From: Octopus bimaculoides
Taxonomy: Eukaryota
DNA length: 63,531 nucleotides
NCBI RefSeq assembly: GCF_001194135.2
Contig: NC_068984.1
Span: 79,611,234 to 79,674,764, forward strand
Reading direction: 5' to 3'
Part shown: positions 16,925 to 58,445 of the stretch, piece by piece
How positions within the stretch are numbered: position 1 is the first letter of the stretch
Layout: each line of letters opens with the position of its first letter
Notes under the pieces: model-generated
Told to the model about the DNA's origin: nothing
The model's input: the letters and a program-made list of their open reading frames with translations, nothing else
Databases searched by the model: none
Program-made: the position numbers and the translations under genes

Positions 16925-17762
16925 CATCATCATGATCATCATCGTTTAACATCTGCTTTCCATGCTAGCATGGGTTGGACAATTTGACTGAGGACTGGAG
17001 AACCAGATGGCTACACCAAGCTCCAATCTTATTTGGCAGAGTTTCTACAGCTGGATGCCCTTCCTAACGCCAGCCACTCCGAGAGTGTAGTGGGTGCTTT
17101 TACGTGCCACTGGCACGAAGGCCAGCCAGGCGGTACTGGCAACGGCCATGCTCAAAATGGTGTATTTTACGTGCCGCCTGCACAGGAGCCAGTCCAGCGG
17201 TACTGGCAATGACCTCGCTCGAATGTCTTTTCATGTGCCAGGAAGGTGATGCTGGTAATGATCACACTCAAATGGTGCTATTTACATGCCACTGGCACGG
17301 AAGCCAGACAGCTGCTCTGGCAACGATCACACTCGGACGGTGCTCTTAGCGCTCCACTAGTACAAGTGCCATCACGATTTCGCTTTCACTTGCCCCAACA
17401 GGTCTTCGTAAGCCGCGTTTAGTGTCCAATGAACGAGACGTAGGCATGGGTGCCAGTTGTCGAATTTAGTTCGATTTCAATTTCAATTTCACTTGCCTCA
17501 ACAGGTCTTTGCAGGCGGAGTTTAGTGTCCAACAAAGGAAAGGTATGCATAAGTGGGCTGGCTACACCCCTGGCAGAGGCCTTGGATTATGGTCTCGCTT
17601 GGCTTGCCGGGTCTTCTCACGCACAGCATATTTCCAAAGGTCTCGGTCACAAGTCATTGCCTCGGTGAGGCCAAATGTTCGAAGGTCGTGCTTCACCACC
17701 TCATCCCAGGTTTTCCTGGATCTACCTCTTCCACAGGTTCCCTCAACCGCTAGGGTGTGGCA
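16925..17762 (-). mobile_element. 5'-truncated RTE LINE: ORF C-terminus, 3' UTR and (GAT)n tail
   Basis: Minus ORF AVEGTCGRGRSRKTWDEVVKHDLRTFGLTEAMTCDRDLWKYAVREK is the RTE C-terminal GRPRKTW motif; continues without break into the tail family. Confidence 0.9.
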
Positions 17763-17783
17763 CTCTATATATGTATATATATG

Positions 17784-17849
<66 letters not shown>

Positions 17850-18767
17850 AAGGTGAATTTATGGAATGAAGTTCCATAAATCCCATCAATTTTATTAAAA
17901 ATGGAGGAGACAAGTTGTTAAAATTTATAAGAAGTTTAATTCTAGCAGTCCATCATTTCATACAGAGATATGATAATTTAAATTCATGATTGAATTAAAT
18001 TAATTAAATATCAACTTACTCTTCAGTGCAGGAAGGAAAGAAACCATAATGCAAGGAACTTAAAAAGAAATATAGCAGAAAAAATTGGATCTAGGAGAGT
18101 CATATTGGTATCCGTATGAGATATTGAACCATAACTAACAGTTATGAAGATGTAAGTAAAGAGGTATCAGAGACGTTCACTCTATAGATGAGTATGGAAA
18201 TTAGAATTATAGTTCCATATAAGTAACATAGTGCCAATAAGTAGTAGAAATGTCCAATGAGAAAACAATACCAAGTTAAAATTAAAATTAAAACTAACCG
18301 TTCAAATCTGTATATAGTATAATGTATTTTTTTTTAAAAATCTATACAGAAGAATGAGGTTAGTGTGAGGAAGTAGTATATGAAAAGGTAATACTAGATA
18401 GTTAACGTAAACAAATGGTGTAAAATAGAGGAATGAGAATGAGTTAAAGAGAGATGATGGATATAAAGGAGTCATGTTTGCATACAGTGTCATATTAGGT
18501 AACATGTATTAATAATAAAAGAGAAAAATAAGTACAAACAGAAAAGCAATTGTTAATATTACAATTAAAGTAGGATGTACTTGCTGTGTTTATAAAGATG
18601 AAAAAGTGAATTTAAAAATTGAAGTTAAGTAGACCAAAATAAATGTAGGGGGAGATAAATGAGCAGAGAAAGAGATGAGTAAAAAAACATAAAACTTTGA
18701 ATAGGGATGTGTTGGTTATACAGAAGGTGTATTTTAGTATATATATAAAAAAAAAAATTATTACAGA

Positions 18768-19651: not shown

Positions 19652-19994
19652 NNNNNNNNNNNNNNNNNNNNNNNNNNNNNNNNNNNNNNNNNNNNNNNNN
19701 NNNNNNNNNNNNNNNNNNNNNNNNNNNNNNNNNNNNNNNNNNNNNNNNNNNNNNGGAGACAAGGAGAAAAACACGGAGAAAAAAAATTGAATAGTGTTCA
19801 GTCAACGGTCAATCATAATAATGGCCGATCATAACAATGACTGACCGGAAGTTAGAAATTCTTATTTCAGGAGAGCTAAGAAAGGGGGAGATAACAAACG
19901 GTGATCGGGAACGAGGGGCTGTGTGTGGGAGGTAGAATGCTGGTGATCTTGACGTATGTAGTGTGAAAATGGGGAAGGGAGAAAGGGAGAAAGG

Positions 19995-22097: not shown

Positions 22098-22523
22098 GCC
22101 TAAGAAGCTTGCTTTGCAACCATGTGTATTCAGGTTCAGTTCCATTGCACAGCAACTTGGGCAAGTGTCTTGTACTATAGCCCTGGACAGACCAATGCCT
22201 TGTGAGTGAATTTAGTAGATGGAAACTGTGGTGAAGCCCATTGTGTGTGTGTGTGCACATGCTAGTGCCCCTCCCCCCACACTGCTTGACAACTGGTGTC
22301 AGTTTGTTTACATCCCTGTAACTATAGCAGTTCAGCAAAAGAGGTCTGATGGAATAAGTAACAGACTTGTGTGGAAAGTAGTTTGCTTACCAACCACATG
22401 GTTCTGGGTTCAGTTCCACTGTGTGGTACCTTGGGCAAGTGTCTTCTTCTGTAGCCTTGGGCCAACCAAAGTCTTGTGAGTGGATTTGGTAGACGGAAAT
22501 GCAAAAGAAGCCTGTTGTGTGTA

Positions 22524-22566
<43 letters not shown>

Positions 22567-22790
22567 ATGTATACACATATGTTTGTGTATCTGTGTTTGT
22601 CTCCCCAGCATCGCTTGACAACCGATGCGGTGTGTTTACGTCCCTGTAACTTAGCGGTTCAGCAAAAGAGACCAATAGATTAAGTACAAGGCTTACAAAG
22701 AATAAGTTCTAGGGGTCGATTTGCTCGCCTAAAGGTGGTGCTCCAGCATGGCCGCAGTCAATTGACCGAAACAAGTAAAGGAATAAAAAA
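22098..22790 (+). mobile_element. Two tandem SINE family A copies (22098-22365 and 22370-22790)
   Basis: Two heads (aagaagcttgctttgcaacc; gtagtttgcttaccaacc), each with the family body and internal microsatellite. Confidence 0.8.
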
Positions 22791-23104: not shown

Positions 23105-23520
23105 ATAATTTTAATTGTATATTCTTTTATTCTTTTATTTGTTTCAGTTGTTTGACTGTGGCCATGCTGGAGCACCGCCTTTAGTCGAACAAATCGACCC
23201 CATGACTTATTCTTTGTAAGCCTACTATTTATCCTATCGGTCTCTTTTGCCAAACCGCTAAGTTACGGGAAGGTAAACACACCAACATTGGTTGTCAAGT
23301 GATGGAGGGGTGACAAGCACAGTCACACAAACATACACACACAGACACACACACACACACACACATGATGGGCTACTTTCAGTTTCCATCTACCAGATCC
23401 ACTCACAAGGCTTTGGTCGACCCGAGGCTATAGTAGAAGACACTTACTCAAGGTGCCCCACAGTGGAACTCAACCTGGAAGCATGTGGTTGGTAAGCCAG
23501 CTACTTACCACACAGCTACT
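23105..23520 (-). mobile_element. SINE family A, antisense copy
   Basis: ttcttttatttgtttcagtt...gtggccatgctggagcaccgcctttagtcg...ggttggtaagccagctacttaccacacagc is the reverse complement of the family. Confidence 0.85.
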
Positions 23521-23924
23521 CTTGTACCTGTAGCTATTAATTTCAATAGAGTGTCTCTGTAATTCTTCATCTTGAGGTATTCCCTCTCTTATTCCCCTGT
23601 ATTCCCTTCATTCAGTGACCTTTCAAAGCCGTATTTCCATGCTTCCTTCTTCTTGGCATCAGTGAGAACACGGGCACTGCTTTAAGCATGCACACACGCA
23701 CACACTAACAAGATAACAAAAGTGAAACTACTTGTAATTTCAGCTTAGTTTAGGTTCCAAAGGTGTCCCCGCTATGATAAACACATCTTTCTATTTTCCG
23801 GGCATAGTGTATCTAGAGTTACACTAGCCAATATATTTGGCTTTTCTAAACAACAGAAATGTATAGTTGAAGAGAAATTTGTCATTTTCTTCTTAGCATT
23901 TTGAGTTATAGTGTAAAGGCTCTT

Positions 23925-24290
23925 ACCAACCACATGGTCCCGGGTTCAGTCCCACTACGTGGCATCTTGGGCAAGTGTCTTCTACTATAGCCTCGGGCCG
24001 ACCAAAGCCTTGTGAGTGGATTTGGTAGACGGAAACTGAAAGAAGCCCGTCATATATATGTATATATATATATGTATGTGTGTTTGTGTTTGTCCCCCCC
24101 AACATCGCTTGACAACCGATGCTGGTGTGTTTATGTCCCCGTAACTTAGTGGTTCGGCAAAAGAGATCGATAGAATAAGTACTAGGCTTCCAAAGAATAA
24201 GTCCTGGGGTCGATTTGCTCGACTAAAAGCGGTGCTCCAGCATGGCCACAGTCAAAAGACTGAAACAAGTAAAAGAGTAAAAGAGTAATA
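23925..24290 (+). mobile_element. SINE family A, low divergence, 5' end clipped
   Basis: ttaccaaccacatggtcccgggttcagtccc...gactgaaacaagtaaaagagtaaaagag. Confidence 0.85.
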
Positions 24291-25289
24291 TATATATATA
24301 AATATATANNNNNNNNNNNNNNNNNNNNNNNNNNNNNNNNNNNNNNNNNNNNNNNNNNNNNNNNNNNNNNNNNNNNNNNNNNNNNNNNNNNNNNNNNNNN
24401 NNNNNNNNNNNNNNNNNNNNNNNNNNNNNNNNNNNNNNNNNNNNNNNNNNNNNNNNNNNNNNNNNNNNNNNNNNNNNNNNNNNNNNNNNNNNNNNNNNNN
24501 NNNNNNNNNNNNNNNNNNNNNNNNNNNNNNNNNNNNNNNNNNNNNNNNNNNNNNNNNNNNNNNNNNNNNNNNNNNNNNNNNNNNNNNNNNNNNNNNNNNN
24601 NNNNNNNNNNNNNNNNNNNNNNNNNNNNNNNNNNNNNNNNNNNNNNNNNNNNNNNNNNNNNNNNNNNNNNNNNNNNNNNNNNNNNNNNNNNNNNNNNNNN
24701 NNNNNNNNNNNNNNNNNNNNNNNNNNNNNNNNNNNNNNNNNNNNNNNNNNNNNNNNNNNNNNNNNNNNNNNNNNNNNNNNNNNNNNNNNNNNNNNNNNNN
24801 NNNNNNNNNNNNNNNNNNNNNNNNNNNNNNNNNNNNNNNNNNNNNNNNNNNNNNNNNNNNNNNNNNNNNNNNNNNNNNNNNNNNNNNNNNNNNNNNNNNN
24901 NNNNNNNNNNNNNNNNNNNNNNNNNNNNNNNNNNNNNNNNNNNNNNNNNNNNNNNNNNNNNNNNNNNNNNNNNNNNNNNNNNNNNNNNNNNNNNNNNNNN
25001 NNNNNNNNNNNNNNNNNNNNNNNNNNNNNNNNNNNTATGTGTGTATATATATATGTATGTGTGTATATATATATATGTATGTGTATATATATATATGTAT
25101 GTGTATATATATATATGTATGTGCATATATATATATATGTATATATATATGTATATATTTGTATGTATATATATATATATATACATGTATGTGTATATAT
25201 ATATGTATGTGTATATATATATGTATGTATATATGTATGTATGTGTATATATATATGTATGTGTACATATATATATATGTATATATATG

Positions 25290-27394: not shown

Positions 27395-28009
27395 GTCCTA
27401 AGTCCTATACCTATTTTCCTCTCTTGTTATATAATAATTTATAAGATAACTACTAAGCTACTTTTATATGTGAACTCCATTTCTTCCAGCTCAATATGTT
27501 CTCAATTCATATACTGCCAAAGTCAACCTGAAAGCAGGGTTGATAAAATAAGTACTAGCTGAGAAGTGGGGTTGATGTAATCCTCTGAAAATTGCTGATC
27601 TTGCGCAGAAAATTAGAAAGAATTTCATGCAAACTTTAGCCGTATATAAACACATTGTTATTATTCCTAATTTGGAAAACAGAAATAATTTAACCTGCCT
27701 TTTTCTCTTACATGACTACATGGTCAACAACCTCTTCATAATAACCGTAGAACTCTGTGTAATACACTTTTTAACTAAAATCTAGATTAAATTTAAGGCT
27801 ATCATGTTGCAAAGAGTAGAAAAAATACGTAATAACGTAATGAAACATTATTATATTTCAGACTATTTCATTATTTTTTCATATGCTTTATATAAAATCA
27901 AATAAAAATCTAACACATTATAGTATATCTAGTCTTGCAGTAGTTGTGCAATATTGTGTTATACATGGTATTATAACAAGACACTTTATTTCACGTCGTT
28001 CCAGTTCAC

Positions 28010-28205
28010 TCATCTGTAGAAATGAGTTGTGACGTCACTGGTGCCAAGCTGTATTGGCCCTTCCCTCTGATAAAATCAATGGCATGGTGAAAAGAGGCTG
28101 GTATGCATGGGCGACTGCTGGTCTTCCATAAAAAAGACCTGTCCAGACTTGTGCCTGAGAGGGTAACTTTCTAGGTGCAATCCCATGGTTATTCATGACT
28201 GATAC
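28010..28205 (+). mobile_element. SINE family C fragment
   Basis: ccagttcactcatctgtagaaatgagttg...cactggtgccaagctgtatt matches 39570-39720. Confidence 0.6.
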
Positions 28206-30985: not shown

Positions 30986-31460
30986 NNNNNNNNNNNNNNN
31001 NNNNNNNNNNNNNNNNNNNNNNNNNNNNNNNNNNNNNNNNNNNNNNNNNNNNNNNNNNNNNNNNNNNNNNNNNNNNNNNNNNNNNNNNNNNNNNNNNNNN
31101 NNNNNNNNNNNNNNNNNNNNNNNNNNNNNNNNNNNNNNNNNNNNNNNNNNNNNNNNNNNNNNNNNNNNNNNNNNNNNNNNNNNNNNNNNNNNNNNNNNNN
31201 NNNNNNNNNNNNNNNNNNNNNNNNNNNNNNNNNNNNNNNNNNNNNNNNNNNNNNNNNNNNNNNNNNNNNNNNNNNNNNNNNNNNNNNNNNNNNNNNNNNN
31301 NNNNNNNNNNNNNNNNNNNNNNNNNNNNNNNNNNNNNNNNNNNNNNNNNNNNNNNNNNNNNNNNNNNNNNNNNNNNNNNNNNNNNNNNNNNNNNNNNNNN
31401 NNNNNNNNNNNNNNNNNNNNNNNNNNNNNNNNNNNNNNNNNNNNNNNNNNATATATATGC

Positions 31461-33119: not shown

Positions 33120-33380
33120 GATGGTAAAGGTAAAAGTTACGTTCTGGAGTCATGCTGACCCATAAGGGCTGGTTTCCCGGTTTCCATGGCATATAAATTC
33201 CCTACTTGGATGGTTCACAGGTCCATCACATGATCACTCATTTTTGCCAGCTGAGTGGAGTGGAGCAGTGTAAAATGAAGTGTTTTGCTCAAGAACACAT
33301 AGCGTTGTCCAATCCAAGAATCGAAACTATGATCTTATGATCATGAGTCTAACATCCTAACCACTAAGCCATGTGGCTCT
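33120..33380 (-). mobile_element. tRNA-derived SINE family C (antisense)
   Basis: Ends ctaaccactaagccatgtg (reverse complement of the tRNA-like head); aggtaaaggtaaa is the antisense tail. Confidence 0.65.
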
Positions 33381-35545: not shown

Positions 35546-36394
35546 TGTTATCACTGCGACTACTACTGTTATCATCAACATTTTATCCATAGATGTAATA
35601 CATTGAACACTTTCCAAGCATATTATATGTAAGAAATAACAACCTATATACACAAACACCTGCATCTATAGATTACTGTATTTGGATAAATGATTATATC
35701 TATATTTCAACAACTCAATTCCGAAATTTGCACATATACATGTAGAAATGAATTTTTCAAGACAAGGAAACAAACAACAACGAAAAAAAAAAAAAACCAA
35801 AAACCAACTCCACCAACAAAAAAAAAAGCAAAGACAAAACTACAACAATAAAAAATAAAAACCCAGAAAAAATTCCAGTCCATAAGCAAACAGCAAAAAG
35901 AAATCCTATCCCAGTTTTTCCATATATATTGCATTGTAATTGGCAAACAAAAACCAAACTAAAAATATGGTCAGGTAAAAAACAACAATTTGAATAAACA
36001 ACCAATAATGCGAAAGATAAATTTACCAAATTGATTTCCATAAATTCTTTTCTCTTTCTAATTTGTTTCTTTTCCTAAAAGAGAAAATTCCTTTCCTGGC
36101 TAGNNNNNNNNNNNNNNNNNNNNNNNNNNNNNNNNNNNNNNNNNNNNNNNNNNNNNNNNNNNNNNNNNNNNNNNNNNNNNNNNNNNNNNNNNNNNNNNNN
36201 NNNNNNNNNNNNNNNNNNNNNNNNNNNNNNNNNNNNNNNNNNNNNNNNNNNNNNNNNNNNNNNNNNNNNNNNNNNNNNNNNNNNNNNNNNNNNNNNNNNN
36301 NNNNNNNNNNNNNNNNNNNNNNNNNNNNNNNNNNNNNNNNNNNNNNNNNNNNNNNNNNNNNNNNNNNNNNNNNNNNNNNNNNNNNNNNNNNNNN

Positions 36395-36888: not shown

Positions 36889-36930
<42 letters not shown>

Positions 36931-36939
36931 AGGAATAGG

Positions 36940-37305
36940 TGTATGGTAAGTAGTTTGCTTACTGACCACATGGTTCCAGGTTCAGTGCCACTGTATGGCA
37001 CTTTGGGCAAGTGTTTTCTATTATAGCCTTGGGGGGTGACCAAACCTTGTGAGTGGATTTCGTAGACAGAAACTGAAAGAAGCCTGTCGTATGTGTGTAT
37101 GTATATGTATATGTTTGTGTGCCTGCATTAGTGCCCCCACCTTCGCTTGACAACCGATGTTGGTGTGTTTAGGTTCCCGTAACTTAGCAGTCTGGCAAAA
37201 GGAACTGATAGAATAAGTACTAGGCTTACCCTGGGGTCAAATTGTTTGACTTAAGGCGGTGCTCCAGCATGGCCACAGTCAAATAACTGAAACAAATAAA
37301 AGAAT
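36940..37305 (+). mobile_element. SINE family A
   Basis: ggtgtatggtaagtagtttgcttactgaccacatgg...cagtcaaataactgaaacaaataaaagaa. Confidence 0.85.
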
Positions 37306-37326
37306 ATATATATATATACATATATA

Positions 37327-37702
37327 CTAGCAGCTAAACCCGGTTTCACCCGGCCTGTTTGGATGATGTGGCTGTGATCGCTTTCGATTAGGCATAAACT
37401 ATAACAGCGTTTCTAAACCTTATCATTTCGGGTCCCCTGTTTCGATTGGAGCCTCTAGCTGTACGAAGATTTCATCACCCCACCCCTGTCAGAAATTGGC
37501 TTCAGGACTTGTGAAGAAAGAATTTGTACGTAGTCTGTTTCTGAGAGCTATTTTATTGAACGTCTGTATAATCATTAATACATTTATTTAATTATGAACA
37601 TAGAAAGAAATTATACATTAATCCCAATTTTTGTAAGCAGTTGTATTCGTAAAAATTTTATTTGCAGAGAGCAGAAATTGAAAGATATATGAAATGGACG
37701 TG

Positions 37703-37752
<50 letters not shown>

Positions 37753-38305
37753 AGAGAGAAAGAGGGTGAGAAAGAGAGATAGAGTGAATGAGTGAAGTTG
37801 TGTGTCATTGACTTACGTTGGCTGGCATGACAAGCACAAAGCTTTTGAGGCGGCAGATGACTGGGGTGATATTAGAAGATGTGAAGAAATGCCATCTTTT
37901 CAGTGGAGCGCTTCTTTGTAGGCAATGTTTCTCGTTTTCCCTTCTGATGCACAAATGCATAGATATTGTGGTCTGCCAACACGGGAGCATCCAACGTAAT
38001 GTTGACCGTGGGAGAACACTTGCTCTATGAGATTTAAACAAACCATTTGCAATAATTGACTATGTGCCTTATTTATTGCCATTGCAAAGGAGAGTTTGGT
38101 AGGAAATTGAAGCCGCTTAAACTCGTAGATCATATCAGAGAGAGGGAGGGACATTGGAGTTATAAGAACATCATGACCAGCAGCCGGGCCATTCAAGATG
38201 GTTGCCTGTAGAACACGGGAGTATAAATTTTGATTATCATGTGAGTGCCATTACACATTATTGGAGCATCCAAATTCTGCAGCAGCATGATGGGCACTCC
38301 TCCTT
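37327..38305 (-). mobile_element. Helitron 3' portion: PIF1-type helicase C-terminus and 3' terminus (hairpin + CTAG)
   Basis: Minus frames GVPIMLLQNLDAPIMCNGTH and GHDVLITPMSLPLSDMIYEFKRLQFPTKLSFAMAINKAHSQLLQMVCLNLIEQVFSHGQHYVGCSRVG...KTRNIAYKEAL match RepHel helicase motifs (FP..L.FAMTINKSQGQ, FSHGQLYVA.SRV). The minus strand ends ggccgggtgaaaccgggtttagctgCTAG|T next to (TA)n. Confidence 0.88.
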
Positions 38306-39460
38306 AGAACTTTCCAGGAAATAATTACTCCCCTCCTCGGAACATTCCAGGAAGTAATTCGTCCCACTCCTCGGAACTTTCCAGGAAGTAATTCCTCCCA
38401 TTCCTTCCCTTCCTTGGAACTTTCCAGGAAGTAACTACTACCCTTCCTCACCCTCTTAGGAACTTACCAGGAAGTAGCTCATCCACGGATCTTTCCAGGA
38501 AGTCCTCGGAACTTTCCGGGAATTCATCAGAATTTCCAGGAAGTCCTACCATCGGAACTTTAGAGGAAGTAGCTCATCATCGGAAGCCCTCAGAATCCTC
38601 CAAGAAGCCCAATCCCCGGAACGTTCCAGGAAGTAGCTCTTCCGAGGATCTTTCCAGGAAACCCACGGAACTTTCCAGGAAGACCCATCCTCGGAACTTT
38701 CCAGACAGTAGCTCATACTTTGATCTTTCCAGGAAGTCACATCATCGGAACTTTCCGCGAAGGAGCTCACACTCGGAGCTTTCTAGGAAGTTCCATCCTC
38801 GGATCTTTCCAGGAAATCCTCAGAACTTTCCAGGAAGCCCCATCCGCGGAAATTTCTAGGAAGTAACTCACTGTCGGATCTTTCCCGGAAATCCTCGGAA
38901 CTTTCCAGGAAGTAGCTCATCAGATGTTTCCAGGAAATCCTCAGACCTCTCCAGGATGTCCCCCTCGGAACTTTCCAGGAAGTAACTCACCTTCGGATCT
39001 TTCCAGGAAATCATCGGAACTTTCCAGGAAGTTCCATCCTCAGATCTTTCCATGAAATAATCGGAGTTATCCAGGAAGCTCCACCCTCGGAACTTCCCAA
39101 GAAGCTCCATCCTAGGATCTTTCCATGAAATCCTTGGAACTTTCAAGGAAACCCCATCCTTGGAACCTTCCACGAAATTCCATCCTAGGATCTTTCCAGG
39201 AAATCCTCGGAACTTTCCAGAAAGTAACTCACCCTCGGATCTTTCCAGAAATCCCTTGGAACTTTCCAGAAAGTTCCATCATCGGATCTTTCCACGAAAT
39301 CCAGGAACTTTCCAGGAAGTAACTACCCTGTGATCTTTCCAGAAAATCCTTAGAACTTTCCAGGAAGACCCTTCATCGGAACTTTCCAGGCAGTAGCTCA
39401 CTCTCGGATCTTTCCAGGAAGTCCTCGAAATTTTCTTGGTAGTCCCATCCTCGGAACTTT
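38306..39460. repeat. Degenerate tandem satellite; 20-45 bp units with core CGGA(A/T)CTTTCCAGGAA
   Basis: Roughly 45 units by eye. GGAAC-type units (~27-30 bp) often alternate with GGATC-type units (~20 bp). About 21 exact TTCCAGGAA counted manually. Confidence 0.95.
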
Positions 39461-39467
39461 ATAATTA

Positions 39468-39720
39468 AGGCACATGGCTCAGTGGTTAGAGTGTTAGGCT
39501 CACAATCAGTGAGTTTAATTCCTGGACCAGGCTGTGTATTGTGTTCTTGATCATGATACTTTATTTCACATTGCTCCAGTTCACCTAGCTGTAAAAATGT
39601 GTCGCAGCGTCACTGGTGCCAAGCTGTATTCTTTTTGCCTTTCCCTTGGACAATATAGGTAGTGTGAGGAGGGGCAGCTGGTATGCATGAGCAACTTCTG
39701 GTCTTTCATAAACAACCCAA
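39468..39720 (+). mobile_element. tRNA-derived SINE family C
   Basis: ggcacatggctcagtggttagagtg (A-box), gagtttaattcctgg (B-box-like), body shared with 28010-28205. Confidence 0.75.
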
Positions 39721-39793
39721 TATTCGACAATTTTTTTAGTGAATACATGGTGATTGCTTATAAGCTTTAAGTTTATAGATATTATCATTTTCG

Positions 39794-39870
<77 letters not shown>

Positions 39871-39873
<3 letters not shown>

Positions 39874-41083
39874 CAGATTGAGTCAAGAGACTTTCATATT
39901 TCAAGCATTAATTTATAGTTTATACAAGTTACCTACAAAGTGTTTATTCATCAGAATATATTCCATCATATTCTGTTGTCTGTTGCCATCATTCTGCCAG
40001 AAGCTCAATTCCATGCTTAAACCATTTGGTTGGTTTAGAGGCAAAATACATCCGGCACCTGTTTTCAACCTCATCCACATTACTGAACCTTTGTCTGTGC
40101 AAGAATTGAGTCATAGCTTGGAAAAGGTAGTAGTCTGGTGGTGCAAGATCTGGACTGTAGGAAGGGTGAGGCAGCACTTCCAGTCCCTCAAGTTCCTTAA
40201 GTTTGCATTTGGTCATGCTGGCAGTATGTGCTGGGGCATTATCATGCTATAGGAGTGTGCATCTTTGATTAACCAATGCTGGGTAGCAGGGTTTCAAAGC
40301 ATCATATACTCACTCCAGTTGTGGAGTATAAAGGTTTACATTCACAACATGACCACCTGGAATAAGTTCAAAGTGCAACAACATCACCTTGAAAATCCAC
40401 CAAACACACAACATGACTTTCTATTCAAACTGCCCTTGCTTGACAACAGATTTTGAAGCTTGACCAAGATGAAGCCACTGATTTCTGTTATCACGATTAC
40501 AAAAATACATCCATTTTCCATCTCCAGCTATAAAACAGGCATTTCAAAGATTTGCCCTCCGTTGTTTGCAAATGTTCATATATTGTTGAGCTTACTTATT
40601 TGTAGCTTCATGAGGAGCTTTTTGACAGTGTCTGTGTACAAGGCTGAGTTTACAGAGGTGTCAATTAATGAAGCTTTCTGAAGGACCAAGTTCTGCCAAC
40701 AGTGTATGAGAGCTTGTGTTTGGCTATTGTTCAGCCATTTCAAGCAAGACCTCTCTGACCTTGGTTTCTTTGAGGTTGGTGTCACCTTCTTTGAAATATC
40801 TGAACCAGCTTTGTGCCACGTGTTTGTTGACAGTCCCTAGGCCTTCCACATCATTAATTTCTTTTGCTGCTGCCCTTGCAGTCAGTCCTTTATTCCACAG
40901 ATAGCATAAAGTGGGTCTAATTGCAGTTTTTTTTTCATCACTCATTATCAAAGCTGTAAAATAAAGAATAAACAATTCAGCAGTGATTGAACAAATTGTT
41001 TCAAATTAATGATATAACATGGAGATACAAGTTGCCAAAAATCATCAGTAATAATCTGAAAAAACTTTTGTCTCAAATTGGTA
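39871..41083 (-). mobile_element. Near full-length inactive mariner transposon (~1.21 kb)
   Basis: Minus: HTH region (TARAAAKEINDVEG..TV..HVAQSWFRYFKEGD), AGDGKW, KVMLCVWW, HDNAPAH, PHPSYSPDLAPPDYYLF. Degenerate TIRs caccagattgagtcaagagactttc vs taccaatttgagacaaaagtttttt. In-frame stops and an internal deletion. Confidence 0.92.
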
Positions 41084-45239: not shown

Positions 45240-45823
45240 NNNNNNNNNNNNNNNNNNNNNNNNNNNNNNNNNNNNNNNNNNNNNNNNNNNNNNNNNNNNN
45301 NNNNNNNNNNNNNNNNNNNNNNNNNNNNNNNNNNNNNNNNNNNNNNNNNNNNNNNNNNNNNNNNNNNNNNNNNNNNNNNNNNNNNNNNNNNNNNNNNNNN
45401 NNNNNNNNNNNNNNNNNNNNNNNNNNNNNNNNNNNNNNNNNNNNNNNNNNNNNNNNNNNNNNNNNNNNNNNNNNNNNNNNNNNNNNNNNNNNNNNNNNNN
45501 NNNNNNNNNNNNNNNNNNNNNNNNNNNNNNNNNNNNNNNNNNNNNNNNNNNNNNNNNNNNNNNNNNNNNNNNNNNNNNNNNNNNNNNNNNNNNNNNNNNN
45601 NNNNNNNNNNNNNNNNNNNNNNNNNNNNNNNNNNNNNNNNNNNNNNNNNNNNNNNNNNNNNNNNNNNNNNNNNNNNNNNNNNNNNNNNNNNNNNNNNNNN
45701 NNNNNNNNNNNNNNNNNNNNNNNNNNNNNNNNNNNNNNNNNNNNNNNNNNNNNNNNNNNNNNNNNNNNNNNNNNNNNNNNNNNNNNNNNNNNNNNNNNNN
45801 NNNNNNNNNNNNNNNNNNNNNNN

Positions 45824-45867: not shown

Positions 45868-46077
45868 TTCTAATTTAATGTTCTGGGTTCAAATCTTGTT
45901 GAGGTGAATTTTTGTCTTTCATCACTTCAACATTGACAAAATAAAGTACCAGTTATGTTCTAGGGTTAGTGGTATCAACTGACCCCATTACCTTAAAGCT
46001 GTTGGCTTAGTGCCTAGAACAGAAGTCATATCATTAGCACATTATTATTATTAAACATATTATTAGCATATTATTAG

Positions 46078-46475
46078 TGGCTGTGTGGTAAGTAGCTTGC
46101 TTACAAACCACATAGTTCCGGGTTCAATCCCACTGCGTGGCACCTTGGGCAAGTGTCTTCTACTATAGCCTTGGGCCGACCAAAGCCTTGTGAGTGGATT
46201 TGGTAGACGGAAACTGAAAGAAACCCATCGCATGCATGTATATATATATATATATATATGTACGTGTGTGTGTGTCTGTGTTTGTCCCCCCAACATCGCT
46301 TGGCAACCAATGATGGTGTGTTTACATCCCCGTAACTTAGCGGTTCAGCAAAAGGGACCAATAGAATAAGTACTAGGCTTACAAAGAATAAGTCCTGGGG
46401 TTGATTTGCCCGGCTAAAGGTGGTGCTCCAGCAAGGCCACAGTCAAATGACTGAAACAAGTAAAAGAGTAAAAGA
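46078..46475 (+). mobile_element. SINE family A, full length
   Basis: tggctgtgtggtaagtagcttgcttacaaaccacatagttccgggttcaatccc...gactgaaacaagtaaaagagtaaaagag. Confidence 0.88.
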
Positions 46476-46864
46476 GTATATTATTAGTATGACAAAATGC
46501 TTAGTGACCTCTCTTGCACTTTTGTACATGATGAGCTCAAATCCTGCTGAGTTTGATTTGCCTTTCATCCTCTTGGTGGTCGGACTTGTGCCAAAATAAG
46601 GAAGGATTACTGCTATTGTTATTGTTATTATTGAAGACATTACATATTATCCAATATTGTGTTGCTGTAGATTGAAGATATTGTGCATACAGGGGGTCTG
46701 CACTGTCTGTCAAGTCACAACAAGGACCTCAGACAGACAGTACTTTATGCAGTACTAAAAACAATCAATTTTTTGCAATATGCCAAGGTTGTAGGATATT
46801 TCTAAAGTGTCCAGATGTTTCTTTCAGGCTGGGTGGTACTGAACCCGATGTTCCGATGACTACA

Positions 46865-47315: not shown

Positions 47316-47345
47316 CATTATCATCATCATCATCATTATTAGTTA

Positions 47346-47795
47346 AGGCGGCAAATTGGCAGAATTGCTAGCACACTGGGTGAAACACTTAGCAGTGTTT
47401 TGTCTGCCGCTACGTTCTGAGTTCAAATTCTGCTGAGGTCGGCATTGTCTTTCATTCTTTTGGGGTTGATAAATTAATTACCTGTTGAGTACTGGGGTCG
47501 ATGAAAGTGACTATCCCCCCTCCCCCAAATTTCAGGCTTTGTGCCTGTAATAGAAAGAATTATCATTATTATTAGTTAAGGTGGCAAACTGGCAGAATTG
47601 TTAACACACTGGGTAAAATGTTTAGCAGTATTTCATCTGTCGCTATGTTCTGAGTTCAAATTCTGCCAAGGTCGACTTTGTCTTTCATCCCTTCAGGATT
47701 AATAAATTAAGTACTAGTGAAAAACTGGGTCAATGTAATCGACTAGCCTCCTCCCCAAGCATTTCAGGCCTTGTACCTTTAGTAAAAAAAGAATA
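47346..47795 (+). mobile_element. Two head-to-tail SINE family B copies with (ATT)n tails
   Basis: aaggcggcaaattggcagaattg and aaggtggcaaactggcagaattg heads; gagttcaaattc B-box; Nin/Deu-like domain. Confidence 0.85.
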
Positions 47796-47796
47796 C

Positions 47797-47864
<68 letters not shown>

Positions 47865-50639: not shown

Positions 50640-50996
50640 TGACTCAGGTTTGGTCTTCTTCCTGGTGGGATTTATGTGGGTAGTGGGTTACTACCTGCAA
50701 CCTTTAGTATCCACAAGTTTTCAATAGTCTTTCAAGTGCTTAGAACCCCACCGAATAATCTTTCCTCTCTCTAAGAGGCAAACTTTCTGTAGAAGCTCTG
50801 TGGGACATTCTATTTGAATATCCTTCAACCATTTGTTTACATCTTGACTTACAATTCCTAAGGCACCAATAATTATAGGCACAACCTTTACAGTTTCCAT
50901 ACTCCTAATTCTTGCAATTTCAAGTTTTAAAGTATTGTATTTTTTTTGGTTTTGTTTTTTGTCCTCTTTCTTTGTGATCCTGGAATCAAATGGACG
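50640..50996 (-). mobile_element. R4/Dong-like RLE C-terminal fragment
   Basis: Minus: PFDSRITKKED...KYNTLKLEIARIRSMETVKVVPIIIGALGIVSQDVNKWLKDIQIECPTELLQKVCLL. Confidence 0.75.
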
Positions 50997-51045
50997 AAAG
51001 GCTCCTCCTCCTCCTCCTCCTCCCCTCCCCTCTTCCTTCTTATTA

Positions 51046-51250
51046 TAAGGTAGTGGATGTGTAGAATTGTTTCTGTATCAGAAAAAATGCTTAATGGCAT
51101 TTCTTCCAGCTCTATGTTCTGAGTTCAAATACAGCTGAAGTCAGATCTGCTGTTCATCGTTTCAAGTTAGATAAAACTAAGTATCAGTTGATGTAAATGA
51201 CTTGTCCACTCTTCCTAAAATTGCTGGCCTTGTGCCAAAAGTTGAAACAA
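51046..51250 (+). mobile_element. Diverged SINE family B
   Basis: gttctgagttcaaatac...gataaaactaagtatcagttg...gctggccttgtgccaaaagttgaaacaattatt. Confidence 0.65.
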
Positions 51251-52627: not shown

Positions 52628-53810
52628 AAGGTGGTGAGGTACCATGATCGTTAGCACACTGGGTAAAATGCTTTGCAGTATTTCATCAATCCTCGCATTC
52701 TGAGTTCAAATCTACCATGGTCAACTTTGCCTTTTATCCTTTTGTGGGGTCAATAAAATAAGTACCAGTTAAACATGGGTTGATGTAATCAACTCATCCC
52801 CTCCACCAAAATTTCTGTCTCATGGTAAAATTAAAACCACCATTATTATTATTACTTAAGGTGGTTAGCTGGCATAGTAGGCAAAATGCTTAGCAGCATT
52901 TTGTCTGTCTTTAATTCTGCGTTCAAATTCTGCCATGGTTGACTTTGTCTTTCATCTTTTTGAGGTTGATAAAATAAGAAGCAGTTGAAGACTGAGGTTG
53001 ATGTGATTGAATTACTCCTTCCCCAGAAAAAACTTTCAGTCTTGTGCCAGAATTTGAAACCATTATTACTGCTATTATTATTTTTATTGCTTTTTTCCTC
53101 AGGATGGTTGTTATAACCTGGCCACTTATTTTTGCTTTGATTGCAGGTTACAACTTGTCAACTTCCCATTGCCTTTTTGCCATTCATTTTAGTCAATCAA
53201 ATCCCAGCGTAACCATTGTAGTATTTTAATTGTTCTCAATAAGTAAACTCATTACAATAGAACTCACTCACAATCTATTCTGATATTTTCTATCCATTTT
53301 GCAATATTGTCCATCACTGTCTCTAACGCTCTTACAATTAATAGTATGATAGCCTCCTCCTCCTCCTCCTCCTCCTCCTCCTCCAGGCAACAGCCTGACA
53401 GAATTGTTAGCATGCTGCACAAAAAATGCTTTGTAGCATTTCAGCTGTCTTTAGGGTTCTGAGTTCAAATTCCACTTGGGGTTGACAATGCCTTTACATC
53501 CTTTTGGGATCGATAAAATAAGTACCAGTTGAGCACTGAGGTCAATGTAATCGACTAGTCCCCTCCCACAAAACTTCAGGCCTTGTGCCTATAGTAGAAC
53601 AGATTATTATTATTATTGAGCTGGCAGAATCGTTAGCTTACCAGCATTTCGTCCGTCTTTGCGTTCTGTGTTCAAATTCCACCGAGGTCGACTTTGCCTT
53701 TCATCCTTTCGGGGTGGATAAATTAAGTACCAGTTTGCCTACTGGGGTCGATCTAATCGACTGGGCTCCTCCCCCGAAATTTCGGGCCTTGTGCCTAGAG
53801 TAGAAAAGAT
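52628..53810 (+). mobile_element. Four SINE family B copies (52628-52840, 52858-53065, 53385-53605, 53617-53810)
   Basis: Each has a gagttcaaatt-like B-box, the gcctttcatcctt..gggg..gataaa..aagtaccagtt domain and an (ATT)n tail. Confidence 0.85.
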
Positions 53811-54153
53811 TATTATTATTATTATTATTATTAATATTATTATTATTATTATTATTAATAATAATATTAATAATAATAATAATGATAATGATAATAATTT
53901 GTACAATCAAATAACAATAGATATTTCAGATAACTCAGTACAAGATGTACAAAATCTTTTCAGACCTGTTCTTTTCTTGAATATTTCTTTCTTCTCATCT
54001 TTTTGGTGCAATATACTTGAGGTTTTTTTTTATACAATAAATAGCAAATAGTATGCAAGCATATATATCTATGTATGCGCTTGCTTCTGAGCATGTGTGT
54101 ATGTGTGTTTCAGGAAAAGAAAGTGAGGAGAAAGCGATTGGATGGGAGGGAGA

Positions 54154-55575: not shown

Positions 55576-56364
55576 ATTTAAAAAAATTCAGAAAAAAATT
55601 AAAACTAAGCATAACTCAGCAGAATTTATTGGAAAACATTGGCAAACAAATGAAGCTTTATTAGAAACATCAGAACACTTCCACATGGAATCCATTGGGA
55701 TTGACTGATCTCAACTTTAATAGATGCAACAAATTGTGGAAGTTGTGAAGATAAACTATGAATACCCAACATATATAACTATGCTGTCTGTTGTTTCCAG
55801 TTGAAATACCATAATATCATTCAAGAAGTAATGAAATTTTGATAGAAATTTCACTTAAAATATGAACACTTTACAATGACTAGTGACAAACTGTTGGTTA
55901 TATATATGTGTGTGTATGTGTGCGTATGTGTGTGCGTATGTGCACACTTTCTATTGAATAAGAAGTCATATAGAAGCATCCTCATTTGTTCACAGGCCAT
56001 TTTGAAGTAGTGATAATGATAATGATGGTGATCCATATATAATAGAAAAGAAGACAGATTCTTGATTTTTTTAAAAACCAACTCTGCTTTCAAAATGGGT
56101 AGACCCGTTGCTAAGTGGCAGTTGGTGATACCAAGTTCAAATGAGAAAGTAAGATAATCCCAAGACACTAGAATTCTCCAGAATTGACATACCATTAAAG
56201 AAAAGTAGAGTCTGGTTATCAGAAAACAAGAAAACATCTGTGCACATATTTTTGCCTTGTTAATTGTCATCAGCACAGCAGTTGTCCTAGCCTTACTCTA
56301 CCTTCAGAAGACGAGACTCTTAGATATATATACAATGGAATAGAATACATTCATAGCATAAGGT

Positions 56365-56915
56365 GAAGGCATGGCTGTGTGGTAAAAAGCTTGCTTCTCA
56401 ACCACAGGGTTCTGGGTTCAGTCCCACTGTGTGGCACCTTGGACAAGTGTCTCCTATAGCCCCAGGCTGACCAAAGTCTTGTGAGTGGATTTGGTAGACG
56501 GAAAGTGAAAGAAGCTTGTCTCATATATATACATATATATATATAGTAGAATATACAAATAATAACAGACGAGGACAGGTGGTGCAAATAACAAAAGTAT
56601 ATATTAGTATGACGCTCGGGAATACGGAAAGTCTTTGACGTTTCGAGCTACGCTCTTCAACAGAAAGAATACATATATATATATATATATATATATATGC
56701 GTGTGTGTGTCTGTGTTTGTCTCCCCTCCCACTACTTGACAATTGGTGCTGGTGTGTTTACATCCTGATAACATAGTGGCTTGGAAAATGATTGATAGAA
56801 TAAGTACCAGACTTTAAAGTAATCGAGTTGATACATTCAATTAAATATTCTTCAAGGCAGGGCCCCAGCATGGCTGCAGTCAAATGACTGAAACATGTAA
56901 AAGATAAAAGATAAG
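56365..56915 (+). mobile_element. SINE family A carrying a Penelope-type terminal fragment in its internal (TA)n (56545-56672)
   Basis: SINE head and tail intact; the foreign segment agaatatacaaataataacagacgagg...cagaaagaatac lies inside the microsatellite. Confidence 0.8.
56632..56668 (-). ncRNA. Minimal type I hammerhead-ribozyme-like motif (dimer-type, PLE-associated)
   Basis: Minus: TCTTT-CTGTTGA-A-GAGC-GTA-GCTC-GAA-ACGT-C-AAAGA. 5-bp stem I, 4-bp stem II, palindromic ACGT stem III, GUC triplet; core differs from CUGANGA at A6>U. Confidence 0.6.
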
Positions 56916-57894: not shown

Positions 57895-58445
57895 CAGCGT
57901 GTTTTCAGTATTCTGTTGCAATGACTGAGCTATGTTGTGCTGTGAGTTTTCTCTTGTAGAGACTCTGTTGAGTTGTGTTGTCAGTGATTTGTTGTAGTGA
58001 TTGCTTTGTGCTGCGAGTATTCTGTTCTAGAGACTGTGTTGTGCCGTCAGCTTTCTGTTGTAGTGACTGTGTTATGTTGTGTTGTGAATGATGGTGTTGT
58101 GTTTTGTTGTTAGTATTTTGTTGCTGTGACTCTGTTGTGTAATAAGTATTCCGTTGCTGTGACTGTGTTGTGTTGTCACTATTTTGTTGTAGTGATTGTT
58201 GTGTGCTGTGAGCATTCTGTTGTAGTGACTATGTTACATTGTGTTGTGAATATTCTGTTGTTGGGACTGTGTTGTGCTGTCACTATTTTGTTGTGGGGGC
58301 CATGTCCTGATGTGTTGTGAGTATTCTGTTAAAGTGATTGTGTTATGTTGTATTATGAATATTCTGTTTTAACAACACTGTTGTGTTTAGATGTCAGTAT
58401 TTTATAGTTGTGACTCTATTGTGTTGTGAGTAATCATGTTGTAAT
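57895..58445. repeat. Degenerate GT-rich minisatellite, ~33-40 bp unit (GTGAGTATTCTGTTGTAGTGACTGTGTTGTGCT), about 15 copies
   Basis: Recurrent agtattctgttg..gtgactgtgttgtg by inspection. Confidence 0.8.

What the first reader, a model, noticed from the sequence alone, without database searches (positions are those of the whole stretch)
38306..39460. Helitron-linked satellite that is a dense array of STAT-type GAS sites
Seen: ~1.15 kb made of units with core GGA(A/T)CTTTCCAGGAA. About 21 exact TTCCAGGAA plus other TTCN3GAA variants (TTCCGGGAA, TTCCCGGAA, TTCTAGGAA, TTCCATGAA), spaced about 20-45 bp. Units are longer (33-43 bp) at the Helitron-proximal end and often alternate ~28/~20 bp distally. 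Known: TTCN3GAA (TTCYNRGAA) is the STAT consensus, STATs bind tandem sites cooperatively, and Helitrons have spread clustered TF sites in other animals (heat-shock elements in Caenorhabditis, MSL sites in Drosophila miranda). Inference: a mobile, expandable JAK/STAT-responsive enhancer or TF-sink cassette inside a glycosyltransferase intron, potentially wiring many loci into an immune or stress regulon. Function is untested; the motif match could be incidental to a palindromic satellite.
Basis: partly seen in the sequence, partly recalled or inferred. Interest (0 to 1): 0.8.

Follow-up and report, generated by a model that had tools for sequence, protein, structure and literature searches.

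The report
Octopus minisatellite beside a Helitron remnant
A 1.16-kb run of about 44 short repeats lies against the tail of a decayed Helitron transposon in an octopus-like genome; each repeat carries a GGAA/TTCC palindrome that fits a STAT site but fits several other factors' sites equally well, so it is most likely an ordinary repeat array, not a demonstrated immune enhancer.

Summary
Window 38297-39460 is a tandem array of about 44 monomers with 21 exact TTCCAGGAA and 31 TTCN3GAA, about 80 times the density in the rest of the window. The monomers fall into three classes of 28, 21 and 26 bp, in irregular order, with four longer units (33-43 bp) at the left edge.

The left neighbour (37327-38296, minus strand) is the 3' kilobase of a canonical Helitron. 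It has a Pif1 helicase C-terminus, a 3' hairpin and a CTAG|T end, and is 86% identical to an Octopus sinensis RepHel Helitron. That intact relative has no array, and the array shows no similarity to Helitron sequence.

The block 37327-39794 could be one chimeric Helitron insertion (A|TC...CTAG|T, flanked by TA microsatellite). I could not corroborate this.

The 14-15-bp core is conserved 2.3 times better than the spacers, but the GAS half-sites are not significantly better conserved than the rest of the core. A GAS-breaking variant has spread through four neighbouring units. The core equally matches ETS, NFAT, HSF-dimer, relaxed kB and BCL6-like consensuses.

I found no other copies, although no octopus genome was searchable. 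STAT function is untested and is not favoured by any test I could run. Interest is modest.

The parts
38297..39460 (.). Tandem array (minisatellite / satDNA-like) of about 44 monomers. The conserved core is GGA(A/T)CTTTCCAGGAA and the spacers vary. There are three monomer classes: A 28 bp (spacer GTARCTCACCCTC), B 21 bp (core GGATC..., spacer ATCCTC) and C 26 bp (spacer GYYCCATCCTC). Their order is xxxxABbCxABCACACBCABcBcABCBCCBCCBABCbaBCAB. Both ends are cut mid-unit.
38306..38458 (.). Four longer edge units (33, 34, 43 and 43 bp). Their spacers are class-A-like with extra CCTTCC-type pyrimidine runs. This is the degenerate left edge of the array.
37327..38296 (-). The 3'-terminal ~970 bp of a canonical Helitron, 5'-truncated at the array border. 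It contains the Pif1-type helicase C-terminus (about 38296-37900, one frameshift and one stop), a 3' UTR with (CA)n at 37705-37752, a small hairpin CCGG...CCGG at 37339-37354, and the terminus CTAG at 37330-37327 followed by T.
   Evidence: Pfam PF21530. Best protein hits are O. bimaculoides 79% and O. sinensis 74%. DNA is 86% identical to O. sinensis L001 10408-11562, with homology stopping at both ends. The L001 element has Helitron_like_N 1.3e-38 and PIF1 6e-36. Hairpin.
39468..39712 (+). Copy of a SINE-like repeat with a tRNA-like head (GGCACATGGCTCAGTGGTTAGAG), starting 7 bp after the array's right end. It is antisense to the Helitron piece.
   Evidence: Two other partial copies lie in the window at 27977-28135 and 33236-33378. 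ARAGORN finds no intact tRNA.
39713..39794 (-). An 82-nt unique segment. Read on the minus strand it begins TCGAAAATGATAATATC... directly after an A of the flanking microsatellite. It is a candidate Helitron 5' terminus and is uncorroborated.
   Evidence: Direct reading. No homologue in L001.
37304..37326 (.). Left flank: (AT)7AC(AT)3A microsatellite. It is the tail of a SINE copy (36895-37326) into which the Helitron 3' end is inserted.
39795..39874 (.). Right flank: (TACA)6(TA)21CACACACC microsatellite. Joined to the left flank it would give one continuous TA/TACA microsatellite, which could be the empty site.

Best explanation
This is a non-coding minisatellite (a short satDNA-like array) in TE-rich DNA of an octopus-like genome. 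A 21-28-bp monomer built around a triple GGAA/TTCC palindrome (GGAA-CT-TTCC-A-GGAA) was amplified in place, probably by replication slippage or unequal exchange. It diversified into three spacer-length classes and then decayed: 8% divergence in the core, 18% in the spacers, with CpG-biased transitions.

The array is physically joined to the last ~1 kb of a canonical Helitron and may sit inside a 2.47-kb chimeric Helitron-bounded block. It is not part of the standard Helitron sequence.

The STAT-type sites are a by-product of the palindromic core. The array may be bound opportunistically by any GGAA-reading factor, but nothing here indicates a dedicated JAK/STAT enhancer or sink.

Shown: the anatomy, the junctions, the Helitron identity, the conservation pattern and the motif ambiguity. 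Inferred: the mode of expansion, neutrality, and the cause of the core's better conservation. That cause could be homogenisation or gene conversion anchored on the repeated palindrome, or binding of an unknown box protein.
For: Tandem structure, classes and degenerate edges.

No coding signal: no Pfam hit; no protein relatives; the one hit in 1.84 billion representatives is a spurious FN3-repeat protein.

Helitron identity and exact junctions. The intact O. sinensis relative lacks any array motif. Array versus Helitron local alignment scores fall inside the shuffle range.

Whole-core conservation, not GAS-specific: positions 2-15 are 86-98% conserved, including GGA outside the GAS and the free central N. 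Within classes, core mismatch is 7.9% and spacer 18.5% (p=1.6e-5). GAS half-sites are 5.2% against 9.7% for the other core positions (p=0.085). Anchoring bias does not explain the core/spacer gap (0 of 900 simulations).

The GAS-breaking variant TTCCAGAAA is found in 4 units at 39215-39337, across classes A, B and C.

The unit-junction CpG decays 4.8 times faster by transitions than other C/G positions (p=3e-4), as expected for germline-methylated, unprotected DNA.

Motif ambiguity: ETS CAGGAAGT x13, TGGAAA x28, GAANNTTC x22, relaxed kB x17, BCL6-like x19.
Against: The core is conserved 2.3 times better than the spacers, and across all three monomer classes. That is the pattern expected of a protein-binding box, and strict neutrality does not predict it.

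The array's CpG o/e (0.60) is twice the window average (0.30). This could mean younger age, or it could mean partial protection from methylation.

TTCCAGGAA is a high-quality vertebrate GAS (PMC3907443), and octopus tissues express JAK-STAT pathway genes (PMC6522055).

A third of neighbouring sites are 21 bp apart, i.e. two helical turns.

Genome-wide copy number, chromatin state and binding are all unknown.
Confidence: 0.62

Rival explanations
1. Structural rival, compatible with neutrality. The array is internal cargo of one chimeric non-autonomous Helitron spanning 39794 to 37327 on the minus strand (2,468 bp). The order would be: 5' TC terminus, 82 nt unique sequence, antisense SINE, array, helicase C-terminus with 3' UTR, hairpin, CTAG. 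This element would have inserted at A|T inside the TA-rich tail microsatellite of a SINE. If it transposed in this form, the array could be dispersed by Helitron transposition.
For: On the minus strand the block reads A|TC...CTAG|T. Both flanks are TA/TACA microsatellite, and when joined they form one continuous repeat. The left flank is the tail of SINE 36895-37326, and other copies of that SINE carry similar (AT)n/(TGTA)n tails. Non-autonomous Helitrons commonly carry unrelated internal DNA (general knowledge). Mollusc Helentron derivatives carry satDNA-like arrays (PMC7492417).
Against: The 82-nt candidate 5' segment has no homologue in the O. sinensis Helitron locus (global and local alignment equal to the shuffle mean). 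The 'TC' rests on one base that could belong to the microsatellite instead. TA-type microsatellites occur about every 3 kb in this window, so one on the right flank is not rare. No second copy was found.
Confidence: 0.35
2. The array is a JAK/STAT-responsive enhancer or STAT sink: tandem GAS sites bind STAT dimers or tetramers cooperatively and confer immune or stress inducibility on the host gene and, through Helitron spread, on many loci.
For: 31 TTCN3GAA, of which 25 fit TTCYNRGAA. The exact TTCCAGGAA is a human STAT5 ChIP site (PMC3907443). JAK-STAT pathway transcripts are present in Octopus maya (PMC6522055). The core is better conserved than the spacers. Helitrons have spread HSE clusters in Caenorhabditis (PMC6927752).
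Against: The half-sites are not significantly better conserved than non-GAS core positions. GGA at positions 2-3 and the free central base are as conserved as TTC/GAA. A GAS-killing G-to-A change spread through 4 adjacent units. 11 of 42 units have lost the site. The motif is equally an ETS, NFAT, HSF-dimer, kB-like or BCL6-like site. Spacings of 21, 26 and 28 bp put successive sites on different helical faces. There is no evidence of mobility or of other copies. CpG decay suggests germline methylation.
Confidence: 0.07
3. The conserved 15-bp box is the binding site of some other protein: an ETS-family factor (CAGGAAGT), a Rel/NFAT-type factor (GGAACTTTCC, TGGAAA), HSF, or a satellite-specific 'box' protein. 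The array would then act as a multi-site enhancer, silencer or chromatin nucleation element independent of STAT.
For: Conservation extends over the whole GGA(A/T)CTTTCCAGGAA box and into the following G(T). CAGGAAGT occurs 13 times, against 0.02 per kb in the rest of the window. GGAA repeat arrays are known to work as ETS-dependent enhancers in human cells with EWS-FLI1 (from memory, not checked here).
Against: There is no binding, accessibility or expression data. The class B core changes GGAAC to GGATC and loses the G of GT, so no single candidate motif is kept in all classes. The array is old and decaying (TRF 62-81% matches).
Confidence: 0.15
4. The Helitron adjacency is a rearrangement accident. 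The array and the Helitron 3' fragment were brought together by deletion or NHEJ in a TE pile-up and have no historical link.
For: Both ends of the array are cut mid-unit: mid-spacer on the left and mid-core on the right. The Helitron is cut inside its helicase ORF. The neighbourhood is a mosaic of SINEs, a mariner remnant and microsatellites. The intact Helitron has no array.
Against: The matching TA microsatellite flanks and the A|TC...CTAG|T configuration of the larger block are somewhat unlikely if the pieces were assembled at random.
Confidence: 0.45

Closest known systems
Cg_HINE: non-autonomous Helentron elements carrying satDNA-like central repeats in the oyster Crassostrea gigas (PMC7492417)
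   Same: A mollusc. A short tandem array is physically tied to a rolling-circle (Helitron-superfamily) element. There is a microsatellite in the element's flank, and the arrays are short and interspersed in euchromatic DNA.
   Different: The element here is a canonical Helitron (3' CTAG, hairpin, A|T site), not a Helentron. No subterminal inverted repeats or 3' palindrome of HINE type were found. The monomers are 21-28 bp. About 1 kb of helicase-coding and 3' UTR sequence separates the array from the 3' end. Multi-copy status is unknown.
Helitron-acquired heat-shock-element clusters in Caenorhabditis (PMC6927752)
   Same: Dense, repetitive clusters of a TF consensus associated with Helitrons.
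   Different: In Caenorhabditis, HSF-1 binding, many copies and expression effects were shown. Here there is one locus, no binding data, and the motif is not specific to one factor. The intact related Helitron lacks the array.
GAS elements (TTCN3GAA) bound by STAT dimers or tetramers; TE-borne STAT sites such as MER41 LTRs in primates (the latter from memory)
   Same: The core TTCCAGGAA is an exact GAS and a reported STAT5 site (PMC3907443). The sites are clustered.
   Different: Known GAS enhancers have 1-4 sites, and the TE examples are dispersed single or double sites. No GAS minisatellite is known to me. No evidence of binding or inducibility here.
Satellite DNAs with a conserved protein-binding box in otherwise variable monomers (e.g. 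the CENP-B box in alpha satellite; from memory), and GGAA microsatellite enhancers
   Same: A conserved short box and variable remainder. GGAA/TTCC content.
   Different: The array is only 1.16 kb and is not known to be centromeric or abundant. The binding protein is unknown.

Membership tests
Canonical Helitron (the flanking element 37327-38296) | RepHel-type protein homology (Pif1-family helicase; Rep in full copies) | tested here: met
   Pfam Pif1_2B above the gathering score. 59 Pif1-like hits, best from Octopus at 74-79%. The 86%-identical O. sinensis copy has Helitron_like_N at 1.3e-38 and PIF1 at 6e-36.
Canonical Helitron (the flanking element 37327-38296) | 3' terminus CTRR with a subterminal hairpin, followed by host T | tested here: met
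   The window reads ...CCGGGTGAAACCGGGTTTAGCTGCTAG|T and L001 reads ...GGTGCTAA|T. Homology stops exactly there. The hairpin is small, a 4-5 bp stem.
Canonical Helitron (as a complete, mobilisable unit containing the array) | 5' terminus TC preceded by host A, upstream of the cargo | tested here: inconclusive
   There is a candidate A|TC at 39794-39793 next to a matching TA microsatellite. It has no homology to L001, and its reading depends on one ambiguous base.
Canonical Helitron (as a complete, mobilisable unit containing the array) | Multiple genomic copies sharing both termini and the cargo | not testable with these tools
   No cephalopod genome collection is available. Indirect searches were empty.
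HINE / Helentron-borne satDNA (Cg_HINE type) | 5' and 3' subterminal inverted repeats, 5' complementary IR and a 3' palindrome flanking a central tandem array | tested here: not met
   The inverted-repeat scan of 37200-39900 returned only microsatellite self-matches. The linked element has Helitron1-type ends. Features as defined in PMC7492417.
Minisatellite / satDNA-like tandem array | Head-to-tail monomers with variants, and more divergent edges | tested here: met
   TRF. Unit segmentation shows three classes, long degenerate units at the left edge and degenerate units at the right edge.
Minisatellite / satDNA-like tandem array | Regular higher-order repeat | tested here: not met
   TRF periods of 73-75 reach only 70-81% matches. 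The class order is irregular. There is no dominant long-range period in the autocorrelation.
STAT-responsive GAS enhancer | TTCN3GAA consensus present | tested here: met
   31 sites, of which 25 fit TTCYNRGAA.
STAT-responsive GAS enhancer | Constraint specifically on the TTC/GAA half-sites relative to the neighbouring bases | tested here: inconclusive
   5.2% vs 9.7% mismatch, p=0.085. Non-GAS positions 2-3 and the central N are equally conserved. A GAS-breaking variant has spread.
STAT-responsive GAS enhancer | Motif specificity: the sequence points to STAT rather than to other factors | tested here: not met
   ETS, NFAT-type, HSF-dimer, relaxed kB and BCL6-like consensuses are enriched to a similar degree.
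STAT-responsive GAS enhancer | STAT occupancy, inducible accessibility, reporter activity | not testable with these tools
   Needs wet-lab or epigenomic data.

The most novel reading that the evidence does not exclude
The array is cargo of a still-recognisable chimeric Helitron (A|TC at 39794 ... CTAG|T at 37327) that exists in many copies in octopod genomes. Its conserved GGAA/TTCC box would be occupied by a signal-dependent factor (STAT, Rel/NFAT or ETS). Helitron transposition would then have seeded multi-site inducible enhancers across loci. That would be a cephalopod counterpart of the Caenorhabditis Helitron-HSE network, but delivered as an expandable minisatellite.
Probability: 0.05. 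Interest if true: 0.7.

Novelty: new member of a known kind. Interest (0 to 1): 0.28.

Why it matters
If the array were shown to be multi-copy Helitron cargo and bound by a signalling factor, it would be a second animal example of rolling-circle transposons distributing clustered response elements. It would be the first in a mollusc, and the site number could grow or shrink by repeat slippage.

As it stands, it mainly adds one more case to a known theme in molluscs: short satDNA-like arrays are physically tied to Helitron-superfamily elements. It also illustrates why a consensus match inside a palindromic repeat is weak evidence for a particular transcription factor.

Tried and rejected
1. Array derived from Helitron internal sequence. 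I noticed a YFLESS (array frame) versus EFLNS (helicase) resemblance near the break. Local alignment of the proximal units and the consensus against the O. sinensis Helitron scored within the shuffle range, and the direct alignment shows no homology beyond GCCCATCATG. Rejected.

2. Coding repeat (the three classes sum to 75 bp, i.e. 25 codons). No Pfam hit. No homologues for the 101-aa ORF. The 155-aa frame gave only a spurious FN3-repeat protein in 1.84 billion representatives. Rejected.

3. Other copies by DNA pattern. The metagenome scan returned three unrelated GC-rich contigs with short 11-12-bp (GGAACTTTCCA)n runs. The prokaryote genome scan returned none. Uninformative for octopus.

4. 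Helitron 5' end to the right of the array. There is no L001 homology apart from a 39-nt piece, which turned out to be the tail of the SINE family. The 82-nt candidate aligned to L001 no better than shuffles.

5. HINE-type subterminal inverted repeats: none.

6. Unusual single-strand DNA structure: weak, z=-2.05.

7. Rfam and tRNA scans of 36.5-41.5 kb gave only sub-threshold microsatellite 'miRNA' artefacts and no tRNA.

8. A roughly 242-bp super-repeat suggested by recurring spacer variants is not supported by autocorrelation.

9. Host gene. Among stop-free stretches of 70 aa or more I saw no glycosyltransferase-like exon. Not pursued further, so the 'glycosyltransferase intron' statement remains unverified.

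10. I ran no further search on the junction ORF. One search had already shown that array-like ORFs are absent from that collection.
Full report
**1. The observation**

Reading window 37600-40200 and counting motifs confirm the finding's description. Positions 38306-39460 contain 21 exact TTCCAGGAA, and there are none elsewhere in the 63,531-bp window. The density is 26.8 per kb, against 0.34-0.36 per kb in the rest of the window and 0.29 sites expected in base-shuffled versions of the array. TRF calls the array at 38300-39460 with periods 21, 26, 47 and 73-75.

Anchoring on the 15-mer GGAACTTTCCAGGAA gives 42 units plus a few degenerate ones. The first four units are 33, 34, 43 and 43 bp. The rest fall into three classes:
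- A: 28 bp, spacer GTARCTCACCCTC
- B: 21 bp, core GGATC..., spacer ATCCTC
- C: 26 bp, spacer GYYCCATCCTC

Their order is irregular: xxxxABbCxABCACACBCABcBcABCBCCBCCBABCbaBCAB. A+B+C adds up to 75 bp, which explains TRF's 73-75 period, but there is no strict higher-order repeat. The enrichment is therefore real. It reflects one motif-bearing monomer copied about 44 times, not about 30 independent occurrences.

**2. The surroundings**

Left flank. The minus strand of 37327-38296 encodes the C-terminal ~135 residues of a Pif1-type helicase, with one frameshift. It passes Pfam's threshold for the Pif1 2B domain. Its best protein relatives are Octopus bimaculoides (79%) and O. sinensis (74%) 'ATP-dependent DNA helicase' fragments. 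These best hits are also why I call the source genome octopus-like.

The O. sinensis locus (L001, contig VCDQ01012807.1) aligns to window 37304-38295 at 85-86% DNA identity. Upstream it carries Helitron_like_N (1.3e-38) and PIF1 (6e-36), so it is a bona fide RepHel Helitron.

At the 3' end both copies read ...CCGGGTGAAACC(G/A)GG(T/C)TTAG(C/G)TGCTA(G/A)|T, and homology stops there. This is the canonical CTRR terminus with a small subterminal hairpin, placed at window 37327.

At the other end, homology starts at GCCCATCATG (about 38296). Upstream of that point the window has array and L001 has more helicase gene. So the Helitron copy is cut inside its helicase ORF exactly at the array border, and the array is cut mid-spacer.

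L001 contains no TTCCAGGAA or CTTTCCAGGAA at all. Neither the proximal long units nor the consensus align to the L001 Helitron better than shuffled controls. The array is therefore not part of the standard Helitron and is not derived from it.

Right flank. The array ends mid-core (GGAACTTT|ATAATTA). Seven bases later a SINE-like repeat begins (39468-39712, tRNA-like head). Two other partial copies of it lie in the window. After it come 82 nt of unique sequence, a (TACA)6(TA)21 microsatellite (39795-39874), and a mariner remnant (39990-40980, minus strand; Pfam Transposase_1, HTH_48). No further Helitron sequence lies to the right.

**3. A possible larger unit**

The Helitron 3' end is inserted in the (AT)n tail of another SINE copy (36895-37326). 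On the right, the unique 82 nt end in ...TTTTCGA|TACATACA.... On the Helitron strand the block 39794 to 37327 therefore reads A|TC......CTAG|T. The two flanks joined would make one continuous TA/TACA microsatellite.

These are the minimal marks of a single Helitron insertion of 2,468 bp. Its interior would be the 82 nt, an antisense SINE, the array and the helicase tail.

I could not corroborate this. The 82 nt have no counterpart in L001, and their alignment scores equal the shuffle mean. The 'TC' depends on assigning one A to the element rather than to the microsatellite. TA-type microsatellites occur about every 3 kb in this window. I put the reading at roughly one in three. It bears on whether the array could ever have been mobile, not on whether it is functional.

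**4. Is the GAS motif what is conserved?**

Across the 42 units, core positions 2-15 are 86-98% conserved, apart from the class-diagnostic A/T at position 4. This includes GGA at positions 2-3, which lies outside the GAS, and the free central base of the N3.

Within length classes, mismatch to the class consensus is as follows:

| Positions | Mismatch | Comparison |
|---|---|---|
| Core | 7.9% | vs spacers: Fisher p=1.6e-5 |
| Spacers | 18.5% | |
| Six TTC/GAA half-site positions | 5.2% | vs other core: p=0.085 |
| Other core positions | 9.7% | |

Simulated arrays with uniform divergence, run through the same anchoring procedure, never gave a spacer/core ratio as large as observed (0 of 900 simulations). 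The conserved box is therefore not an artefact of how I defined the units. One caveat applies: variants are shared by descent, so the p-values are optimistic.

Eleven of the 42 units have lost TTCN3GAA. Four of these carry the same G-to-A change (TTCCAGAAA) in neighbouring units of all three classes (39215-39337). A GAS-destroying variant has therefore been propagated, which argues against purifying selection on GAS integrity.

**5. Motif specificity**

The core is GGAA-CT-TTCC-A-GGAA, and many factor families read GGAA/TTCC. The counts by simple consensus are:

| Consensus | Count in array |
|---|---|
| STAT TTCN3GAA | 31 |
| NFAT-type TGGAAA | 28 |
| HSF dimer GAANNTTC | 22 |
| BCL6-like TTCCTNGAAAG | 19 |
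| Relaxed kB GGRRNNYYCC | 17 |
| ETS MGGAAGT | 16 |
| ETS CAGGAAGT | 13 |
| Strict kB GGGRNWYYCC | 0 |

All the non-zero counts are enriched by one to three orders of magnitude over the rest of the window. TTCCAGGAA is indeed a reported human STAT5 site (PMC3907443), and JAK-STAT pathway transcripts are reported in Octopus maya white body (PMC6522055). STAT binding is therefore chemically plausible, but the sequence does not single STAT out. Centre-to-centre spacings of 21, 26 and 28 bp place successive sites on different faces of the helix.

**6. State of the DNA**

The CpG formed at each unit junction (..CTC|GGA..) is kept in 24 of 42 units. Transitions at these two positions are 4.8 times as frequent as at the other C/G positions of the core (p=3e-4). 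That is the signature of germline cytosine methylation.

CpG observed/expected is 0.30 for the whole window, 0.60 for the array (0.68 for its consensus) and 0.59 for the Helitron piece. The array and the Helitron piece are thus less decayed than their surroundings. The simplest reading is a younger age, though partial protection from methylation is not excluded.

Single-strand folding is only weakly better than shuffles (z=-2.05).

**7. Search for other copies**

The indirect routes gave nothing useful:
- Protein search with a 101-aa array ORF: no hits.
- Exhaustive HMMER search with a 155-aa frame: one spurious FN3-repeat protein.
- Two-unit DNA pattern against metagenome contigs: three unrelated GC-rich contigs with short 11-12-bp (GGAACTTTCCA)n runs.
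- The same pattern against prokaryote genomes: no matches.

Copy number in the source genome therefore remains unknown. This is the main gap in the analysis.

**8. Interpretation**

The best-supported account is an ordinary, fairly old minisatellite built on a GGAA/TTCC palindromic box. It expanded in place by slippage or unequal exchange (inferred), and it is joined to the 3' kilobase of a canonical Helitron in a TE pile-up.

The box is better conserved than the spacers, which is the one feature that hints at something more. The cause could be homogenisation anchored on the repeated palindrome, or binding of a protein. STAT is one candidate among several.

The idea that the array is cargo of a mobilisable Helitron is undecided, at about one in three for the structural reading. 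The intact relative lacks the array and no second copy was found.

**9. Comparison with known systems**

The nearest described phenomenon is the carriage of satDNA-like arrays by non-autonomous Helentrons (Cg_HINE) in the oyster (PMC7492417). The present case does not meet the HINE definition: it has no subterminal inverted repeats and the ends are Helitron1-type.

The Caenorhabditis Helitron-HSE system (PMC6927752) is the functional precedent. None of its defining evidence (TF occupancy, many copies, expression effects) is available here.

I therefore file the finding as a new member of a known kind: a tandem array associated with a Helitron-superfamily element in a mollusc. Interest is modest.

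Noticed in passing
window 37304-37326 and 39795-39874: The 2,468-bp block holding the Helitron tail, array and SINE is bracketed by TA/TACA microsatellite on both sides. On the minus strand it reads A|TC...CTAG|T. This may be one chimeric Helitron insertion into the tail of SINE 36895-37326.
   Followed up: partly
window 39215, 39243, 39264, 39337: The same GAS-breaking variant TTCCAGAAA occurs in four neighbouring units belonging to all three monomer classes. This suggests local spread of a variant by conversion or duplication within the array.
   Followed up: partly
L002 9859-9891 and 10584-10634; L003 1745-1777; L004 4298-4400: Unrelated metagenome contigs (L002 is 57% GC) carry short tandem runs of an 11-12-bp unit, GGAACTTTCCA / TTCCTGGAAAG. 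Two of them lie just after a (CAACTG)n-type repeat. The same palindromic 11-mer has become a microsatellite in other organisms.
   Followed up: no
window 39990-40980 (minus strand): Decayed mariner-type transposase: Pfam Transposase_1 at 5e-13, HTH_48 at 7.5e-08, and a weak DDE_3 match below Pfam's threshold, with several stops.
   Followed up: partly
window 39468-39712, 27977-28135, 33236-33378; L001 7107-7145: A SINE-like family with a tRNA-like head (GGCACATGGCTYAGTGGTTAG) and a conserved tail (GGCTGGTATGCATGRGCRACTGCTGGTCTTCCATAAA). A 39-nt tail fragment also sits about 260 bp upstream of the first Helitron ORF in the O. sinensis locus, in the same relative orientation to the Helitron as in the window.
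   Followed up: partly
window 1265-1532, 15662-15988, 22101-22687, 23123-23532, 23922-24300, 36895-37326, 46076-46476, 56361-56807, 62661-63178: About ten copies of a second, abundant SINE family. It ends ...CAGTCAAATGACTGAAACAAGTAAAAGARTA, and several copies carry TA-rich microsatellite tails. It is also present in O. sinensis L001 at 15175-15666.
   Followed up: partly
window 57911-58385: Another minisatellite with periods of 33 and 66-71 bp (TGTTGTG...ATTCTGTTGTAGTGAC), 65-76% matches.
   Followed up: no
window 47331-47807 and 53435-53823: Two roughly 2-copy tandem duplications (233 bp and 206 bp) of SINE-like sequence, bracketed by (TAT)n/(ATT)n microsatellites.
   Followed up: no
window 2902-3332, 8870-9372, 11993-12120, 19652-19754, 24309-25035, 30986-31450, 36104-36394, 45240-45823, 60896-60905: Nine runs of N (assembly gaps). 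The window comes from a draft scaffold, so repeat lengths near the gaps, and possibly array lengths in general, may be under-assembled.
   Followed up: no
whole window: CpG observed/expected is 0.30 while GpC is 1.01, at 35.6% GC. This is strong CpG depletion, consistent with heavy germline methylation of the region.
   Followed up: no
window 61413-61664 and 63060-63530 (plus strand); 50724-51077 and 17565-17858 (minus strand): Stop-free stretches that look like LINE reverse-transcriptase or ORF2 fragments by eye. They were not scanned. Among stretches of 70 aa or more I saw no glycosyltransferase-like exon.
   Followed up: no
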